From Octopus bimaculoides (taxonomy: Eukaryota): DNA of 34,989 nucleotides. Each line of letters starts with the position of its first letter. Positions within the stretch are counted from its first letter, which is position 1. The notes beneath the pieces are model-generated. The model saw nothing but the letters and a program-made list of their open reading frames with translations, was not told the DNA's origin and made no database searches. Shown one piece after another: positions 1 to 32,281 of the stretch. The stretch covers positions 5,173,048 through 5,208,036 of the forward strand of contig NC_068995.1 of the NCBI RefSeq assembly GCF_001194135.2. The letters run 5' to 3'. Position numbers and translations under genes: made by a program.

Positions 1-314
1 GTTGCCAGTACCGCCTGACTGGCTCCTGTAGGATTTTCGAGCAAGATCGTTGCCAGTGCCCCTGGACTGGCTTGTGCGGGTGGCACATAAAAGACACCAT
101 TTCGAGCGTGGCCGTTTTCGTGCGGGTGACACGTAAAAGCACCCACTACACTCTCTGAGTGGTTGGCGTTAGGAAGGGCATCCAGCTGTAGAAACTCTGC
201 CAAATCAGACTGGAGCCTGGTGTTGCCATCCGGTTTCACCAGTCCTCAGTCAAATCGTCCAACCCATGCTAGCATGGAAAGCGGACGTTAAACGATGATG
301 ATGATGATGATGAT
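1..314 (+). mobile_element. Family C element (RTE-type LINE 3' end or RTE-tailed SINE), young copy truncated by the window edge
   Basis: Contains GGTTGGCGTTAGGAAGGGCATCCAGCTGTAGAAAC...CGTCCAACCCATGCTAGCATGGAAAGCGGACGTTAAACG followed by a (GAT)n tail. Very similar to the copy at 27791-28070. Confidence 0.8.
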
Positions 315-9196: not shown

Positions 9197-9411
9197 CCTT
9201 TTCTACTGGAAGCACAAAGCCTCAAATTTAGGACAAAGGATTAAGTCAATTATATTGACCCCAGTGCGTAACTGGTACTTATTTAATCAACCCCGAAAGG
9301 ATGGAAGGGAAAGTTGACCCCGGCAGAATTTGAACTCAGAATGCAGTGGCAGATGAAATACCATTAAGCATTTCGCCCAGCGTGTTAACGATTCTGCTAG
9401 CTTGCTACCTT
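9197..9411 (-). mobile_element. Family B SINE, full length
   Basis: Reverse complement of the 1597-1813 family, flanked by (AAT)n and (GAT)n tracts. Confidence 0.85.
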
Positions 9412-12884: not shown

Positions 12885-13370
12885 TAGCATCCATTAAATG
12901 ATGATGATGTTTGTTTTTGATGGTGGTATGGGTTGGATGGCTTGACAGGAGTTGGCAAGGCCAGAAACTGCACCAGGTTCCATAATCTGTTTTTGGCTTG
13001 GTTCTTGCAGGTGGATGCATTTCCTAGTGCCAACCACTTTACAGAGTGGTGTGGGTGCTTTTAACGTGGCACTCACACCAGTGCATTTTATGTGGTACCA
13101 GCCCCTGTGCTTTTTTATGTGGTACCAGCCCCTGTGCTTTTTTATGTGGTACCAGCCCCTGTGCTTTTTCTGTGGTACCAGTACTTTTTATGTGGCACCA
13201 TCACCAGTGCTTTTTATGTGGCACCATCACCAGTGCTTTTTCTGTGGTACTAGCACCTGTGCTTTTTCTGTGGTGCCAGCACCAATGCTTTTTATGTGGT
13301 ACTAGCACCAATGCTTTTTATGTGGTACTAGCACCAGTGCTTTTTATGTGGTACCAACACCAAATGCTGG
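12885..13370 (-). mobile_element. Family C element with an internal 26-27-nt tandem array
   Basis: ATGGGTTGGATGG...GGATGCATTTCCTAGTGCCAACCACTTTACAGAG is the reverse complement of the family C tail. It is followed by about 11 units of GTGCTTTTTATGTGGTACCAGCACCA. Confidence 0.8.
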
Positions 13371-14349
13371 TGTAAGCTGTCCTATCCATCAACAAATAAT
13401 TAACTTCCATCTGGTCAACTTACAGAGATGGAAGTAGAGGTTAGCTGCAGCCATCAGTGGCAAGTTCTTTTCCTGGTTTCTCTGTACAAGTCTGAAAGAC
13501 ATCCCACAGTCACAGACACCACCATACTGCATTTGATTAAGTCATAAATAATCGCACATTACTCATTTCCAGAGTTTTGCAACTGATTTTTACTGCTCAG
13601 TTTTATTGTAAAATATTAAAACAAGAAAATGAATAAATAATATATTGATATATTGATAACAGTGATAAATAAATATCAGACAGTGAAGAAATATTCCATA
13701 CAATGTGGATTTGGAAGATATTGGTTGTTCTGTTAGAATTTCTCGGAAGGAAAATAACTCAATTATCAAACTTACAGTAGCTTAAATAACAACTTCCCTT
13801 CGCTTGTGAGACATCAAAGGAAGTTACCATCAATGGATAACTACACATATACACAATCACAGTAGACATACACCTATACACACAGGCACTGTATATATAT
13901 TATATATATATATATATGTATCTATCGTTGCATTTTGGATAGGTCATACTAAGTAAAACAACAACAATAACAACAAAGAAAAAACGAAATCCAAAAGCTT
14001 ATAGTTCATTTCTTTGCTGATTGATTCTGCAACTATATCTCTGTAAAGTTTTCTTCAATGAAGTCTAGCGGAAGAACTTTCATGAAAAAGGAGATAAGAG
14101 TGAAGCAGAAGACTTTGTCACATGTATTTTCATTGACAAAATGACTATGAACTACTATAACCTCCATTTTTGGACTTACTCTATTATACTCTGTGAACAA
14201 TAAATTATCCCTGGAATTTCAGTTTGTATGGAATGGTTTCCTTTAAGGGAAACTGTCCACTTCCCTTCAGTGTCAGAACTTGTATTTGCAGGAGAGCTAA
14301 TAAAGGATTAGAGCTCAGACCTCTAAATCCTCTTTTATCTACATATACA

Positions 14350-20115: not shown

Positions 20116-20150
<35 letters not shown>

Positions 20151-20244
20151 ATACATATTTATACATATACATGTATATACATATATACACACACACACAC
20201 ATATATATATATATACACCCACACACACATATTCTTTTGTTTTA

Positions 20245-20373
20245 NNNNNNNNNNNNNNNNNNNNNNNNNNNNNNNNNNNNNNNNNNNNNNNNNNNNNNNN
20301 NNNNNNNNNNNNNNNNNNNNNNNNNNNNNNNNNNNNNNNNNNNNNNNNNNNNNNNNNNNNNNNNNNNNNNNNN
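20245..20373. other. Assembly gap (N run); further gaps at 22779-22788, 25273-25282 and 32015-32186
   Basis: N characters, each gap flanked by low-complexity sequence. Confidence 1.
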
Positions 20374-21330: not shown

Positions 21331-21558
21331 GGTGTTGGTGCCATGTATAAAACACCTGTGCTGGAACCATGTACAAGGCACCCAGTACACTCTGTAAAGT
21401 GGTTGGCATTAGGAAGGGCATCCAGCCATAGAGACTGTGCTAGACAGATAATTAGAGCCTGGTGCTGCTCTCTGGCTTGCCAGTTGCTGTCAAACCGTCC
21501 AACCCATGCCAGCATGGAAAATGGACATTAAATGATGACGATGATGATGATGGTGATG
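21331..21558 (+). mobile_element. Family C element
   Basis: GTGGTTGGCATTAGGAAGGGCATCCAGCC...AAACCGTCCAACCCATGCCAGCATGGAAAATGGACATTAAATGATGACGATGAT. Confidence 0.8.
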
Positions 21559-26407: not shown

Positions 26408-26598
26408 TTTTTAATTTTGGATCAAGGTTAGTAATTTTGAGGGGAGGGGCAAGTCAGTTACATCGAGCCTACAGTACTTGAAAGGATGAAAAGCAAAGTT
26501 AATTTTGGCAGGATTTGAACTCTGAAAGAAATGACTTGGAAGAAATACTGCTGAGCATTTTGTCCAATGTCCTAACGATTCTGCCAGCTCACCACCTT
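26408..26598 (-). mobile_element. Family B SINE (array copy 1)
   Basis: Head reverse complement AAGGTGGTGAGCTGGCAGAATCGTTAG; core partly deleted. Confidence 0.75.
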
Positions 26599-26660: not shown

Positions 26661-26825
26661 TCTTTTCTACTAAAGGCACAAGGCTTGAAACTTTGGGGGA
26701 GGGGAATAGTTGATTACATTAACTCCAGTGCATAACTGGTACTTAACTTATTGACCCTGAAAGAATGAAAGACAAAGTTGACCTCGGCGGAATTTGAACT
26801 CAGAACATAACAACAGATGAAACCC
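26661..26825 (-). mobile_element. Family B SINE (array copy 2, 5'-truncated)
   Basis: CCAGTGCATAACTGGTACTT...GTTGACCTCGGCGGAATTTGAACTCAGAAC. Confidence 0.8.
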
Positions 26826-26860
26826 TGCCTGAATAGAAATAATTATGATGATGATGATAA

Positions 26861-27038
26861 TTTATTTCTTTATTGCCCACAAGGGGGCTAAACATAGAGG
26901 GGACAAACAAGGACAGACAAAGGGATTAAGTCGATTACATCGACCCAGTGTGTAACTGGTACTTATTTAATCAACCCTTAAAGGATGAAAGGCAAAGTTG
27001 ACCTCGGTGGAATCTGAACTCAGATGAAAAACCACCTT
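26861..27038 (-). mobile_element. Family B SINE (array copy 3, distinct 3' end, internal 5' deletion)
   Basis: Family B core plus a different tail (reverse complement ...TTTGTCTGTCCTTGTTTGTCCCCTCTATGTTTAGCCCCCTTGTGGGCAATAAAGAAATAAA). Confidence 0.8.
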
Positions 27039-27104
27039 AATAATGATAATGATAATAATAATGATAATAATAATGATGATCGTAATAATAATGATGATAA
27101 TAAT

Positions 27105-27302
27105 CCTTTCTGAAATTTTGGTTTGAGGGGGAAAGTCGATGACATTGACCCCAGTACACAGCTGGTACTTTCGTCACCAACCCCAAAAAGATTAAAAGGC
27201 AAAGTCAACCTTGGCGGAATTTGAAATCAGGATGTAAAGATGGAGGAAATGCTGCAAAGCATTTCGTCACTCATGCAAATGATTTTGTCAGTTTGCTGCC
27301 AT
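27105..27302 (-). mobile_element. Family B SINE (array copy 4, diverged)
   Basis: TTGACCCCAGTACACAGCTGGTACTT...GCAAAGTCAACCTTGGCGGAATTTGAA...AAGCATTTCGTC. Confidence 0.75.
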
Positions 27303-27790: not shown

Positions 27791-28032
27791 GTGCAGGTGG
27801 CACGTAAAAAAACACCTTTTGAGCGTGGTCATTGGCAGAACCACTGACTGGCCCTTGTGTCGGTGGCATGTAAAAACACCCACTACACTCTCGGAGTGGT
27901 TGACGTTAGGAAGGGTATCCAGCTGTAGAAACTCTGCCATATCAGATTGGAGCCTGGTGCAGCCATCTGGTTCGTCAGTCCTCAGTCAAATCGTCCAACC
28001 CATGGTAGCATGGAAAGCAGATGTTAAACGAC

Positions 28033-28070
<38 letters not shown>
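27791..28070 (+). mobile_element. Family C element, young copy with (GAT)n tail
   Basis: Very similar to 95-314 (CACCCACTACACTCTC.GAGTGGTTG.CGTTAGGAAGGG.ATCCAGCTGTAGAAACTCTGCC...). Confidence 0.85.
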
Positions 28071-28071
<1 letters not shown>

Positions 28072-28161
28072 ATATATATATATATATATATATTCATGCT
28101 TTCGGCGTGAATGGTTTTTTTATATGGTGTCATGTTTCACAATCTTGTAAATAATAATAAC

Positions 28162-28472
28162 GGTATTTTTATATAAGCTTAAAGCTTACGGCAATCACTG
28201 TGCAATGACTAAGGAAAATAATCTAATAAAGGGACATATAAGCCCTCGATAGAAAAAAGAAAGCTTTCCTATCCATGTGGGACACAAACCCACATCCCTT
28301 TGTTAACGCGACTAAGTGTGTTACCTGTTAACAAAGGAATGTGGGTTCGACTCCCACATGGATAGGAAATCCTTCTTTTTTCTGTTGATGGCTCATGTGC
28401 TCCTTTATTAGACTAATTTCCTAAGTCATTGCACGGTGATCACCGTAAGCTTTAAGCTTATATGAAAATACC
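28162..28472. mobile_element. Foldback (palindromic) element: 146-bp inverted arms, 19-nt loop, tRNA-like centre; probable MITE-like element, class unknown
   Basis: 28162-28307 aligns without gaps to the reverse complement of 28327-28472 (20 mismatches by hand count). The right arm contains CTGTTAAC and GTGGGTTCGACTCCCAC. Confidence 0.85.
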
Positions 28473-29059
28473 ATAATATTTGTAAAACATAGTAATTCAT
28501 ATCCAGTTGTGGACTTCTGCTCAGTTACAGAGCATATACACAGGAACCAAACTGGGTACACAGTGACATCAACAGAGAAACATTTTCATTGAAAACTGTA
28601 TGTACTGCAATGTATTCTATCTATAACTTGTTATTATTTACCCATGAAGCTGCTGTCTGTAACTAGACTCACACACACACACATACAGCCAGATAATCCT
28701 TAACATTTAGTAACATTCACGTAATATCTGTCATCAGTTTCAAAACACATTTAGAGAATTTATGAGACCAGTTCAGTTTGTCAGTAAATATAATAACAAC
28801 TTTCCTATATTAAATTTCAGAGTAACAATGATTTATGGACTTCAAAACAATTTTGTATCAACTTAAGTCAAATCATAGGAAAATTCTTTTTTTTGTAAAT
28901 GGCTTTCAACTTTATTTAGGTTAACTAAAAAAATATTAGAATTACATTTTTGAAAATATAAAATATATTTATAAATGTGAATATGGAAATTCCACCAACT
29001 CTGAAATACTGACTGCAAAGAATATTACAAAAGGTTTGGTACTTGTAGAGGAAGAACTG

Positions 29060-29450
29060 CAAGAATATTGCTAGCAACCCTTAAGCAATATCCTTACTGA
29101 TCTTCCTCTAAAAGTACCAGCCTTTCAATTTAAGAGAATTTGATGGAATTTCTGTATTTACACCTGTAGCTTGCTGTTGCCCTAACAGCATCAGCTTCTC
29201 ATTTAATAAACTCTCGTTATGGGACACTGGCAACATCAACTTCTTCAAACCACACATCTTTTCTAAATTTGATGTAGACCTGTTCATGAAAAACTTGTAA
29301 ACCATTTATGCAATCTAGTCATACATTTCCCTGAGCATCATTCAAATTGAGGGCTTTATTTCATCCCATGACTCCGGTATGATATCCACAGCTTTCATGA
29401 TATTGAATTTCTTCCAGTAGTCTCTAATTATAAATTGATCCTCCCTCTAA
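29060..29450 (-). mobile_element. Tigger/pogo-like (DDE_1) transposase relic
   Basis: Frame-broken translation IRDYWKKFNIMKAVDIIPESWDEIKPS* ... EEVD ... SHNESLLNEKLMLL resembles Tigger C-terminal motifs (FWK.YNI..A...I..AW.EV; F.EVD..DV.ELL.SH.E.LTNE.L). Confidence 0.65.
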
Positions 29451-31919: not shown

Positions 31920-32246
31920 CACAAACATATATAGAGACACACATACACACACAAACGCATACAAACATATATACATACATGTATTTAAACACATGAGTGT
32001 GTGTGTATATATATNNNNNNNNNNNNNNNNNNNNNNNNNNNNNNNNNNNNNNNNNNNNNNNNNNNNNNNNNNNNNNNNNNNNNNNNNNNNNNNNNNNNNN
32101 NNNNNNNNNNNNNNNNNNNNNNNNNNNNNNNNNNNNNNNNNNNNNNNNNNNNNNNNNNNNNNNNNNNNNNNNNNNNNNNNNNNNNNTATAGGTATATATA
32201 TGCATATGTATATAAATACATGTGTGTGTGTGTGTGTATGGATCTA

Positions 32247-32281
<35 letters not shown>

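What the first reader, a model, noticed from the sequence alone, without database searches (positions are those of the whole stretch)
28162..28472. 311-bp foldback element built around a tRNA-Asn-like anticodon and T-arm
Seen: two 146-bp arms align without gaps (126/146 identical; 14 transitions and 6 transversions by hand count) around the 19-nt loop GCGACTAAGTGTGTTACCT. The inner end of the right arm reads CTGTTAAC-AAAGGAAT-GTGGGTTCGACTCCCAC: an anticodon-loop-like CTGTTAA (GTT) followed by a T-arm hairpin with a B-box-like GGTTCGACTCC. The left arm carries a decayed mirror copy. The outer ends hold small palindromes (AAGCTTAAAGCTT, CGGTGATCACCG), and the left flank is an (AAT)n run. Known: eukaryotic tRNA-Asn has CTGTTAAC...GGTTCGA, and tRNA-derived SINEs normally carry one tRNA head at one end. 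Inference: this is a non-autonomous element made by head-to-head inverted duplication of a tRNA-derived sequence. It may have had outward-facing Pol III B-boxes, and as RNA it would form a roughly 146-bp hairpin in either orientation (ADAR, Dicer or cruciform substrate). It fits no standard SINE or MITE layout that I recognise.
Basis: partly seen in the sequence, partly recalled or inferred. Interest (0 to 1): 0.75.

Follow-up and report, generated by a model that had tools for sequence, protein, structure and literature searches.

The report
Head-to-head pair of truncated SINEs
The 311-bp "foldback" is real, but it is two decayed, 5'-truncated copies of an abundant tRNA-derived SINE lying head-to-head at one locus, not a new kind of mobile element; at most it is a passive source of double-stranded RNA.

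Summary
In detail: 126/146 identical, 14 transitions, 6 transversions, 19-nt spacer. With gaps the arms run 28132-28307 and 28327-28500.

Read laying shows the arms belong to a repeat family of hundreds to thousands of copies in organism A, also present in at least two other organisms. At least 80% of family reads that reach the "loop" leave at 28321-28326 and continue into a different sequence. That continuation completes a tRNA-like head: ARAGORN at default calls a 75-nt cloverleaf, and the head is 51/70 identical to a published tRNA-Arg-TCT.

The "loop" is therefore 19 extra SINE bases of the left copy. The "CTGTTAA anticodon loop" is a junction artefact, because the family reads CGCGTTAA. 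The isotype is unresolved (Arg, Asn and Thr all possible).

Both copies lack the A box. I found no significant TSD, no junction microhomology and no second copy of the junction.

Each arm is closer to the family consensus (91%, 89%) than to the other arm (86%). They share three minority states.

As RNA, either strand folds into a roughly 170-bp duplex (z about -24). One low-depth RNA contig carries three A>G changes on the minus strand that five DNA datasets lack, a thin hint of ADAR editing.

Verdict: ordinary inverted SINE pair, low interest.

The parts
28115..28326 (-). Left SINE copy (sense on the minus strand). It is 3'-complete or nearly so and 5'-truncated inside the D-loop of the tRNA-like head.
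   Evidence: The reconstructed family consensus aligns to 28326-28115 at 91.0% over 212 nt without gaps. Family depth is 100-400 reads against 0-2 in the flank. Low-depth family signal continues to about 28100.
28308..28326 (-). The 'loop'. These are 19 extra bases of the left copy's tRNA-like head (3' part of the D arm and 5' strand of the anticodon stem), not a spacer.
   Evidence: Family depth is undiminished across 28308-28324 at 210-270 reads per run, with no majority differences. Reads leave only at 28321-28326.
28326..28327 (.). Junction of the two 5' truncation points. It is blunt: no filler and no microhomology.
   Evidence: The family continuation after 28326 is TTACACCAGC..., and family sequence upstream of the right copy is ...TTAGTCGC. 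Neither matches the window across the junction.
28327..28500 (+). Right SINE copy (sense on the plus strand). It is 5'-truncated in the anticodon loop, has a deletion in the (ATT)n stretch, and ends about 30 nt short of the left copy's 3' extent.
   Evidence: The consensus aligns to 28327-28477 at 89.4%. The gapped arm alignment reaches 28500. Family depth falls to 0-1 beyond 28480.
28341..28357 (+). T arm with a perfect B box (GGTTCGACTCC) in the right copy.
   Evidence: Rfam gives a T-arm-only match (tmRNA model, 15.1 bits). The family version GTGGGTTCGAGTCCCAC is identical to the T arm of the published human tRNA-Arg-TCT.
28277..28293 (-). Decayed T arm and B box of the left copy (GTGGGTTTGTGTCCCAC in sense).
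   Evidence: Differences from the family majority at 28284 and 28286, the latter a CpG decay.
28175..28187 (-). 13-nt palindrome AAGCTTAAAGCTT in the SINE 3' region (left copy).
   Evidence: Identical in both arms and in the family majority.
28447..28459 (+). 13-nt palindrome AAGCTTTAAGCTT in the SINE 3' region (right copy).
   Evidence: Identical in both arms and in the family majority.
28422..28453 (-). Three candidate A-to-I sites (28422, 28446, 28453) on a minus-strand transcript.
   Evidence: X19 RNA-type contig 28382-28542 at depth 2.4 shows T>C at these places. Five DNA datasets match the window exactly there. All three are A-U pairs in the duplex with a 5' U.
27947..28093 (+). Neighbouring unrelated SINE-like repeat with a (GAT)n(AT)n tail. 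It abuts the 3' end of the left copy and obscures any target-site duplication.
   Evidence: Four copies of this repeat occur in the window: 211-312, 529-630, 21451-21552 and 27947-28048.

Best explanation
**What it is.** The locus holds two old, 5'-truncated copies of one abundant tRNA-derived SINE family, joined head-to-head at 28326|28327. The left copy (28115-28326) reads in sense on the minus strand. The right copy (28327-28500) reads in sense on the plus strand. The '19-nt loop' is simply the extra head sequence that the left copy retains. Probability of this identity: about 0.85-0.9.

**What it does.** Neither copy keeps the A box, so the pair is not an autonomous Pol III unit and is not mobile as a foldback. 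Its only plausible activity is passive. When Pol II reads through it on either strand, the RNA folds into an imperfect duplex of about 170 bp, the standard substrate for ADAR.

**How it formed (inferred, not shown).**
- Most likely (about 0.45), both copies arose in a single retrotransposition-linked event. For example, two cDNAs primed from the two nicked strands of one target could each be 5'-truncated and then joined by end-joining.
- A later local inverted duplication has probability about 0.2.
- Two independent insertions have probability about 0.3.

The two copies then decayed independently, mainly by transitions and CpG loss.
For: **Family status.**
- Depth inside the arms is 100-400 reads against 0-2 in the flank, at roughly 0.8x sampling.
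- The contig word-depth ratio is about 5,000 for the 3' body (273,002/54.9) and about 460 next to the head (25,373/54.9).
- The family is present in organisms A, B and C.

**The unit is a monomer.**
- 175 of about 210 X21 reads leave at 28321-28326. Their continuation is the same in seven runs from three organisms: TTACACCAGCGAATCAGCCTCC.
- All long X1 contig pieces on the right side start exactly at 28327.

**tRNA head.**
- ARAGORN at its default threshold calls a 75-nt cloverleaf in the reconstructed head. Only 3 of 500 shuffles give any call, even at the relaxed threshold.
- The minimum-free-energy topology is a cloverleaf.
- The head is 51/70 identical to the published tRNA-Arg-TCT, and 0 of 500 shuffles score as well.

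**Decay pattern.**
- The left arm differs from the family majority at 11 of 146 sites and the right arm at 14 of 146. These are mostly transitions, and the CpG count falls from 6 to 2 and 3.
- Each arm is 91% or 89% identical to the consensus but only 86% to the other arm.

**Relatedness of the arms.** They share three minority states (28189/28445, and CGCG>CATG at 28275-6/28358-9). From the read frequencies, the chance that a random family member shares these is about 0.008-0.025. With sites placed at random the hypergeometric P is 0.07.

**dsRNA and editing.**
- Folding gives z of about -24 on both strands.
- One RNA contig carries three T>C changes that five DNA datasets lack. All three lie in A-U pairs with a 5' U.
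Against: - The family consensus is reconstructed from read majorities and 30-nt overhang consensuses, not from aligned full-length copies.
- I could not run a covariance model on it. Rfam's tRNA model does not match the window.
- The head's folding energy is no better than shuffles (z -0.32).
- No significant TSD was found under any formation model. The best is a 6-nt ATTCAT, and 38% of shuffles do as well.
- There is no microhomology at the junction, so the single-event origin rests on geometry and shared variants only.
- The right copy ends about 30 nt short of the left copy at its 3' side, which fits a simple symmetric event less well.
- The junction was not confirmed in independent reads.
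- Transcription is marginal. Three deep RNA-seq runs, each sampled at about 6%, gave no reads on the unique flank. The editing hint is a single contig at depth 2.4.
Confidence: 0.85

Rival explanations
1. Two independent insertions. A second SINE copy happened to integrate, in the opposite orientation, exactly at the truncated 5' end of an older copy.
For: No composite TSD can be shown. The two copies have different 3' extents. The arms are no more alike (86%) than typical family members are to the left arm, where most reads are under 90% alike. SINEs are very dense in octopus genomes, at 11.6% (PMC13282606), and this window is packed with them.
Against: The two truncation points abut with no intervening base. 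With about 10^3 copies in a genome of about 2.4 Gb, my estimate of chance same-family pairs within 20 bp is far below one. The arms share three minority states. Their divergence from the consensus is similar, at 11 and 14 of 146.
Confidence: 0.3
2. DNA-level inverted duplication. A single 5'-truncated copy (the left one) was partly duplicated in inverted orientation by fold-back priming or a replication template switch, leaving the usual short spacer.
For: An inverted duplication with a short spacer (19 nt) is the classic fold-back signature. The right arm covers only 28132-28307 of the left copy, an arbitrary segment. Shared minority states would be inherited. The palindrome GTTAAC sits at the inner end of both arms.
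Against: There is no microhomology between the 3' end of the 'loop' and the switch point. Only 3 shared differences stand against 8 and 11 private ones, so the duplication would have to follow the insertion almost at once. The outer end of the right arm lies close to the family's natural 3' region rather than in unique DNA.
Confidence: 0.2
3. One reading: a mobile, non-autonomous foldback (MITE-like) element built from an inverted tRNA-derived duplication.
For: Long terminal inverted repeats with a short centre; small palindromes near the ends.
Against: The junction is not repeated. At least 80% of family reads leave at the loop, and no contig crosses the junction. There is only one copy in 35 kb. 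No TSD was found. The arms are 14% diverged while each is closer to a monomer consensus.
Confidence: 0.03
4. A selected hairpin RNA gene, such as a miRNA or endo-siRNA precursor.
For: Rfam's long-hairpin miRNA models give sub-threshold scores: MIR5048 at 62 bits against a gathering score of 160, and mir-1252 at 36 against 70. The fold is very stable.
Against: The scores are far below gathering and reflect generic hairpin shape. The arms decay at the neutral-looking rate of the family, with no compensatory pattern. There is essentially no expression.
Confidence: 0.03
5. Assembly artefact: a false palindromic join of two SINE copies.
For: The window comes from a gapped scaffold with four N runs. 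The junction-word search found no run.
Against: A graph fold-back artefact gives perfect arms, but these differ at 20 of 146 sites. The right arm's exact sequence, contiguous with the unique flank, is in five independent datasets. The junction has no shared sequence through which an assembler could misjoin.
Confidence: 0.04

Closest known systems
tRNA-derived SINEs (type-2 Pol III head, body, 3' region), including the octopus families OK, OR1 and OR2 of Ohshima & Okada 1994 and the roughly 900 unclassified SINE families annotated in Octopus vulgaris (PMC13282606)
   Same: A tRNA-like head with a perfect B box and a recognisable A box; a unit of about 240+ nt; hundreds to thousands of interspersed copies; copies that are 3'-complete and 5'-truncated; a 3' body shared with other heads (modular families).
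   Different: I could not compare it with OK, OR1, OR2, Repbase or Dfam sequences, so it is unknown whether this exact family is already named. By eye the body shows no CORE-like sequence. The LINE partner is not identified.
Inverted SINE pairs as ADAR substrates (inverted Alu pairs in primates; repeat-derived dsRNA in octopus, PMC5625713)
   Same: Two inverted copies of one SINE that pair within a single transcript into a long imperfect duplex. Octopus has the strongest hyper-editing signal and a very high density of such loci.
   Different: Here the copies abut, with a 19-nt loop instead of hundreds of bases between them. Both are head-truncated. Evidence of transcription and editing is one low-depth contig.
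L1 twin priming (5'-inverted insertions; PMC2912911)
   Same: An inversion inside a single retrotransposition product, made by priming on both strands of the target. The junction lies in the interior.
   Different: Twin priming inverts the upstream part of the same RNA, so the two segments are consecutive and non-homologous. Here both arms cover the same SINE positions, which would need two RNA molecules or a copy-back. Such inversion is reported as rare for trans-mobilised Alu and SVA (section heading).
MITEs and foldback DNA transposons (also the palindromic Harbinger repeat of frog, PMC5625713)
   Same: Long inverted arms around a short centre; hairpin-forming as RNA.
   Different: Those are multi-copy as whole units with TSDs. 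This junction is unique, and the repeated unit is the monomer.

Membership tests
tRNA-derived SINE | 5' head derived from a tRNA, with internal Pol III A and B boxes | tested here: met
   This holds for the family, not for the two window copies. ARAGORN at default calls a 75-nt cloverleaf in the reconstructed head, and only 3 of 500 shuffles give any call. The head is 51/70 identical to the published tRNA-Arg-TCT, with 0 of 500 shuffles as good. The B box GGTTCGAGTCC is perfect. By eye the A-box region TGGTGTAAAGG matches 7 of 9 specified positions. The window copies retain only the 3' half (T arm and B box).
tRNA-derived SINE | [quoted passage not shown] | tested here: met
   The unit is about 240+ nt. 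Depth ratios imply about 460 copies (head-proximal) to about 5,000 copies (3' body). Overhangs beyond the family's ends diverge.
tRNA-derived SINE | 3' region or tail used for target-primed reverse transcription; copies 3'-complete and 5'-truncated | tested here: inconclusive
   Both copies extend to the family's 3' region and are cut at the 5' side. The family's 3' end is only roughly located, and no LINE partner could be searched.
tRNA-derived SINE | Target-site duplications flank an insertion | tested here: inconclusive
   The best candidate is a 6-nt ATTCAT (28092 / 28495), matched or beaten by 761 of 2,000 shuffles. The left boundary is masked by a neighbour's microsatellite tail.
MITE / foldback transposon | The whole inverted-repeat unit is multi-copy with conserved ends | tested here: not met
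   Family reads leave at 28321-28326. All long contig pieces on the right side start at 28327, and none crosses. There is one copy in the window.
MITE / foldback transposon | TSD of characteristic length at both ends | tested here: inconclusive
   No significant direct repeat flanks the composite.
tRNA-Asn-derived sequence | Anticodon loop CTGTTAA in an anticodon stem, and best overall match to tRNA-Asn | tested here: not met
   CT (28325-6) belongs to the left copy and GTTAA to the right copy. The family reads CGCGTTAA. ARAGORN assigns CGT. Overall identity is 51/70 to Arg-TCT, 48/70 to Asn-GTT (sequence from memory) and 40/71 to Thr-CGT (from memory). The isotype is unresolved.
Rfam tRNA (RF00005) | Covariance-model score at or above gathering | tested here: not met
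   There is no tRNA hit in the window even at E<=10. ARAGORN finds 0 genes. This is expected because both copies lack the 5' half. The model could not be run on the reconstructed family head.
miRNA precursor families MIR5048 / mir-1252 | Score at or above the family gathering threshold | tested here: not met
   62 bits against 160, and 36.4 against 70. These are generic long-hairpin matches.
L1-type twin-priming inversion | Inverted and direct segments are consecutive, non-overlapping parts of one template RNA | tested here: not met
   Both arms cover the same consensus positions: 50-200 for the right copy, 31-242 for the left.
Inverted-repeat SINE pair edited by ADAR | Long intramolecular dsRNA, plus clustered A>G in RNA that is absent from DNA | tested here: inconclusive
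   The duplex is shown. Editing rests on one contig at depth 2.4 with three T>C changes that five DNA datasets lack. The raw RNA-seq runs gave no reads on the unique flank.
CORE-SINE (octopus OR1/OR2) | Shared CORE central domain of about 60 bp | not tested
The two papers read disagree on which OR family is the CORE member.

The most novel reading that the evidence does not exclude
The pair was born as a hairpin in one retrotransposition event. Target-primed reverse transcription could have started on both nicked strands using two SINE RNAs, or there could have been a copy-back, with the two truncated cDNAs then joined end-to-end. If that process recurs, it would be a direct generator of tight long-dsRNA loci, and so of ADAR substrates, in a genome already known for extreme RNA editing.
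Probability: 0.25. Interest if true: 0.4.

Novelty: new member of a known kind. Interest (0 to 1): 0.17.

Why it matters
As it stands, this matters little. Inverted SINE pairs are the commonest source of long dsRNA in animal transcriptomes, and this one is old, truncated and barely transcribed.

The useful outcomes are three corrections:
- the apparent "new element layout" dissolves once the family's monomer is seen;
- the "tRNA-Asn anticodon loop" is a junction artefact;
- the tRNA origin is real but its isotype is open.

If head-to-head abutting pairs proved to be over-represented genome-wide, they would point to a two-sided priming or copy-back mode of SINE integration. They would also point to a built-in source of ADAR substrates in cephalopods. 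That would be of moderate interest to people who study retrotransposition mechanisms and RNA editing.

Tried and rejected
- **tRNA models on the window.** ARAGORN found 0 genes and Rfam gave no tRNA hit, only a 17-nt T-arm match.
- **Other copies in the window.** Searches with the element and with the reconstructed consensus found none.
- **Fishing real family copies from public contigs.** I searched the protein collection with a 45-aa open frame of the consensus, hoping for spurious ORF calls. It found no candidate, and I did not repeat the costly search.
- **Alternative SINE tail.** I first read the palindrome AGGTTCGTCCATCGATCGATGGACGAACCT, seen after many family reads, as an alternative SINE tail. 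I rejected this because it occurs only in the three "GENOMIC OTHER" runs of one study, sits next to arbitrary positions, and is absent from the window. It is most likely a proximity-ligation linker. For the same reason I do not use the "opposite strands" joints in those reads as evidence for other inverted dimers.
- **TSD searches.** Three formation models gave nothing significant.
- **Junction-word index search.** No run was listed, which is uninformative.
- **Literature.** A string search for the family sequence found only tRNA-Arg-TCT papers. The 1994 octopus SINE paper is not held.
- **Thermodynamic test of the head.** The topology is a cloverleaf, but z is only -0.32.

Full report
**1. 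Observation**

The inverted repeat exists exactly as described. Arms 28162-28307 and 28327-28472 are 126/146 identical, with 14 transitions and 6 transversions, around the 19-nt GCGACTAAGTGTGTTACCT. The repeat finder gives 151-nt arms at 85%. A gapped alignment extends homology to 28132-28307 and 28327-28500. As RNA, the region folds into an almost continuous hairpin on either strand: -199 and -212 kcal/mol, with shuffles near -77 and z about -24. The T-arm-like hairpin GTGGGTTCGACTCCCAC is at 28341-28357.

**2. Covariance and tRNA tests on the window**

ARAGORN finds no tRNA in the 35-kb window. Rfam at E<=10 gives no tRNA match. It gives only a 17-nt T-arm match through the tmRNA model (15 bits) and sub-threshold matches to long-hairpin miRNA families (MIR5048 at 62 bits against 160; mir-1252 at 36 against 70). 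Nothing reaches gathering score anywhere in the window.

**3. The arms belong to a high-copy family whose unit is a monomer**

I laid raw DNA reads and contigs on 28100-28660. The unique right flank gets 0-2 reads, while the arms get 100-400 reads at about 0.8x sampling. The same family is present in organisms A, B and C. Contig word-depth ratios suggest about 5,000 copies of the 3' body (273,002/54.9) and about 460 copies of the head-proximal part (25,373/54.9).

Family reads run through the left arm and through the "loop" at undiminished depth, and then leave. In X21, 175 of about 210 reads end their match at 28321-28326. Their overhang has a reproducible consensus, TTACACCAGCGAATCAGCCTCC..., in seven runs from three organisms. 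All the longest contig pieces on the right side begin exactly at 28327, and none crosses the junction.

The repeated unit is therefore not the foldback. The 19-nt "loop" is part of the left copy, and the foldback junction is a single-locus feature.

**4. What the family is**

I joined the family majority over the left arm, the loop and the 30-nt overhang, and read the result in sense (minus strand of the window). It gives:

...GGCT GATTCGC TG GTGT AAAGGTA ACAC A CTTAG/TCGCGTTAA/CAAAG GGAT GTGGG TTCGAGT CCCAC GCGGATA GG...

- ARAGORN at its default threshold calls a 75-nt tRNA here. Only 3 of 500 shuffles give any call, even at the relaxed threshold.
- The minimum-free-energy topology is a four-arm cloverleaf, although its energy is no better than shuffles (z -0.32).
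- The 17-nt T arm is identical to that of human tRNA-Arg-TCT as printed in two papers. The whole head is 51/70 identical to that tRNA, with 0 of 500 shuffles as good.
- Identity to Asn-GTT is 48/70 and to Thr-CGT 40/71. Both of those sequences I recalled from memory, so they are leads only.
- ARAGORN reads the anticodon as CGT, in a loop with non-canonical positions 33 and 37.

The family is a tRNA-derived SINE with a perfect B box and a recognisable A box, but its isotype is unresolved.

The family reads CGCGTTAA.

The 3' part of the family continues ...AAGCTTTAAGCTTATATAAAAATACC ATTATTATTATTTACAGGATTGTAAAATACGGCGCC.... So the "(AAT)n flank" is internal to the SINE. The AAGCTT(T/A)AAGCTT palindrome is a family feature, whereas CGGTGATCACCG is a locus-specific product of substitutions. 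Many reads share the 3' body but switch at 28257/8 to other head sequences. That fits the modular SINE families described in molluscs.

**5. Anatomy of the locus**

The reconstructed consensus aligns to 28326-28115 on the minus strand at 91.0% over 212 nt without gaps. It aligns to 28327-28477 on the plus strand at 89.4%. The left copy is cut inside the D-loop and the right copy inside the anticodon loop. Both lack the A box. The right B box is perfect and the left one has decayed.

The junction is blunt, with no filler and no microhomology. The left copy's 3' end abuts the (GAT)n(AT)n tail of an unrelated SINE-like repeat that occurs four times in the window.

No TSD can be shown under any formation model. 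The best candidate, a 6-nt ATTCAT, is matched or beaten by 38% of shuffles.

**6. History**

Against the family majority, the left arm has 11 differences in 146 sites and the right arm has 14. Three are shared: T>C at 28189/28445, and CGCG>CATG at 28275-6/28358-9. Eight are private to the left arm and eleven to the right.

The private changes are mostly transitions, several at CpG. The CpG count falls from 6 in the consensus to 2 and 3.

Each arm is closer to the consensus than to the other arm (91% and 89% against 86%). There is therefore no sign of arm-to-arm gene conversion.

From the read frequencies, a random family member would carry all three shared minority states with probability of about 0.008-0.025 (my calculation). 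With sites placed at random, the chance of three or more coincidences is 0.07. The arms therefore probably derive from the same source lineage or the same event.

Jukes-Cantor distances are 0.079 (left to consensus), 0.103 (right to consensus) and 0.151 (arm to arm). That puts the copies at roughly 20-30 My.

That age agrees with contigs from organisms B and C. They carry the orthologous right flank and start inside the right arm (X14 record 16 and X15 record 24).

**7. How the pair formed**

This part is inference. With about 10^3 copies in a genome of about 2.4 Gb, I estimate that chance head-to-head abutment of two same-family copies within 20 bp is expected far less than once per genome. 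Combined with the shared variants and the similar ages, I favour a single retrotransposition-linked event at about 0.45. That could be reverse transcription primed on both nicked strands using two SINE RNAs with the truncated cDNAs joined by end-joining, or it could be a copy-back.

A simple snap-back is disfavoured. The 3' end of the "loop" cannot pair next to the switch point.

Classical L1 twin priming does not fit. It inverts a different, upstream segment of the same RNA, whereas both arms here cover the same positions (PMC2912911).

A DNA-level fold-back duplication (about 0.2) and two independent insertions (about 0.3) remain open. An assembly artefact is unlikely because the arms differ at 20 sites. 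The right arm, contiguous with its flank, is also exact in five independent datasets. The junction itself, however, was not confirmed in independent reads.

**8. Function**

The window has no credible coding ORF. Three deep RNA-seq runs, each sampled at about 6%, put no read on the unique flank. The reads they place on the element come from an expressed paralogous copy elsewhere in the genome.

One small RNA-type run (X19) has a 161-nt contig covering 28382-28542 at depth 2.4. It spans the right arm and the unique flank and shows T>C at 28422, 28446 and 28453. Locus-specific contigs from five DNA datasets match the window exactly at those positions.

On the minus strand these three sites are adenosines in A-U pairs of the hairpin, each with a 5' U (UAG, UAC, UAA). 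The chance of three 5' U neighbours is 0.04.

This is the expected signature of ADAR acting on a rare minus-strand read-through transcript. It fits the very high hyper-editing and dsRNA density reported for octopus (PMC5625713). But it is one low-depth contig from another animal, so private SNPs are not excluded.

**9. Verdict**

The finding is a decayed head-to-head pair of truncated copies of a tRNA-derived SINE. It is a known kind of structure and not a new element class. Interest is low.

The residual curiosity is the exact abutment of the two truncation points. It would matter only if such pairs proved to be over-represented genome-wide.

Noticed in passing
Reads of runs X21-X23 laid on window 28100-28560 (not in the window itself): A perfect 30-nt palindrome, AGGTTCGTCCATCGATCGATGGACGAACCT, follows family reads at arbitrary positions (28162, 28188, 28321, 28362, 28367, 28393, 28460, 28473). 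It appears only in the three 'GENOMIC OTHER' runs of one study and is absent from the window. It is most likely a proximity-ligation bridge or linker. Chimeric joints in those runs should therefore not be read as genomic rearrangements.
   Followed up: partly
window 211-312, 529-630, 21451-21552, 27947-28048: Four copies of another SINE-like repeat (...TGGAAAGCAGATGTTAAACGA) each end in a (GAT)n tail that grades into (GT)n or (AT)n microsatellite. One of them is the immediate left neighbour of the foldback.
   Followed up: no
window 9291-9364, 26476-26549, 26755-26828, 26975-27048, 27182-27255: Five copies of a third repeat contain a T-arm-like GGAATTTGAACTCAGA. Four of them are clustered at 207-279-bp spacing just upstream of the finding, each followed by (AAT)n-type tails.
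   Followed up: no
window 13051-13387: A tandem array with a 26-nt period (ACCAGTGCTTTTTATGTGGCACCATC-like units, up to 90% identical).
   Followed up: no
window 29037-29119: A separate small inverted repeat with 36-nt arms, 86% complementary, and an 11-nt loop (TGGTACTTGTAGAGGAAGAACTGCAAGAATATTGCT / AGCAATATCC...) lies about 550 bp to the right of the foldback.
   Followed up: no
RNA reads laid on window 28252-28326: One paralogous copy of the SINE head region is clearly expressed in all three RNA-seq runs, at 40-55 reads each. All reads share 28284 A>T, 28286 A>G, 28308 G>A and 28310 G>A, and continue after 28325 into ATTATATCTGTTTTAATAAAGATTTTGTAC. This looks like a 3' UTR with an AATAAA signal at another locus.
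   Followed up: no
Family reads leaving at window 28257/28258: A large share of reads match the SINE 3' body (28140-28257) but switch to other sequences at 28257/8, for example GAGGGCTTACCTATCCGGCACCGAAATATA. Several SINE families with different heads appear to share this body.
   Followed up: partly
window 20145-20373 vs 32053-32281: The 'longest inverted repeat' reported for the window (229 nt, 86%) overlaps the N runs 20245-20373 and 32015-32186. It is largely an artefact of N pairing with N and of microsatellites.
   Followed up: no
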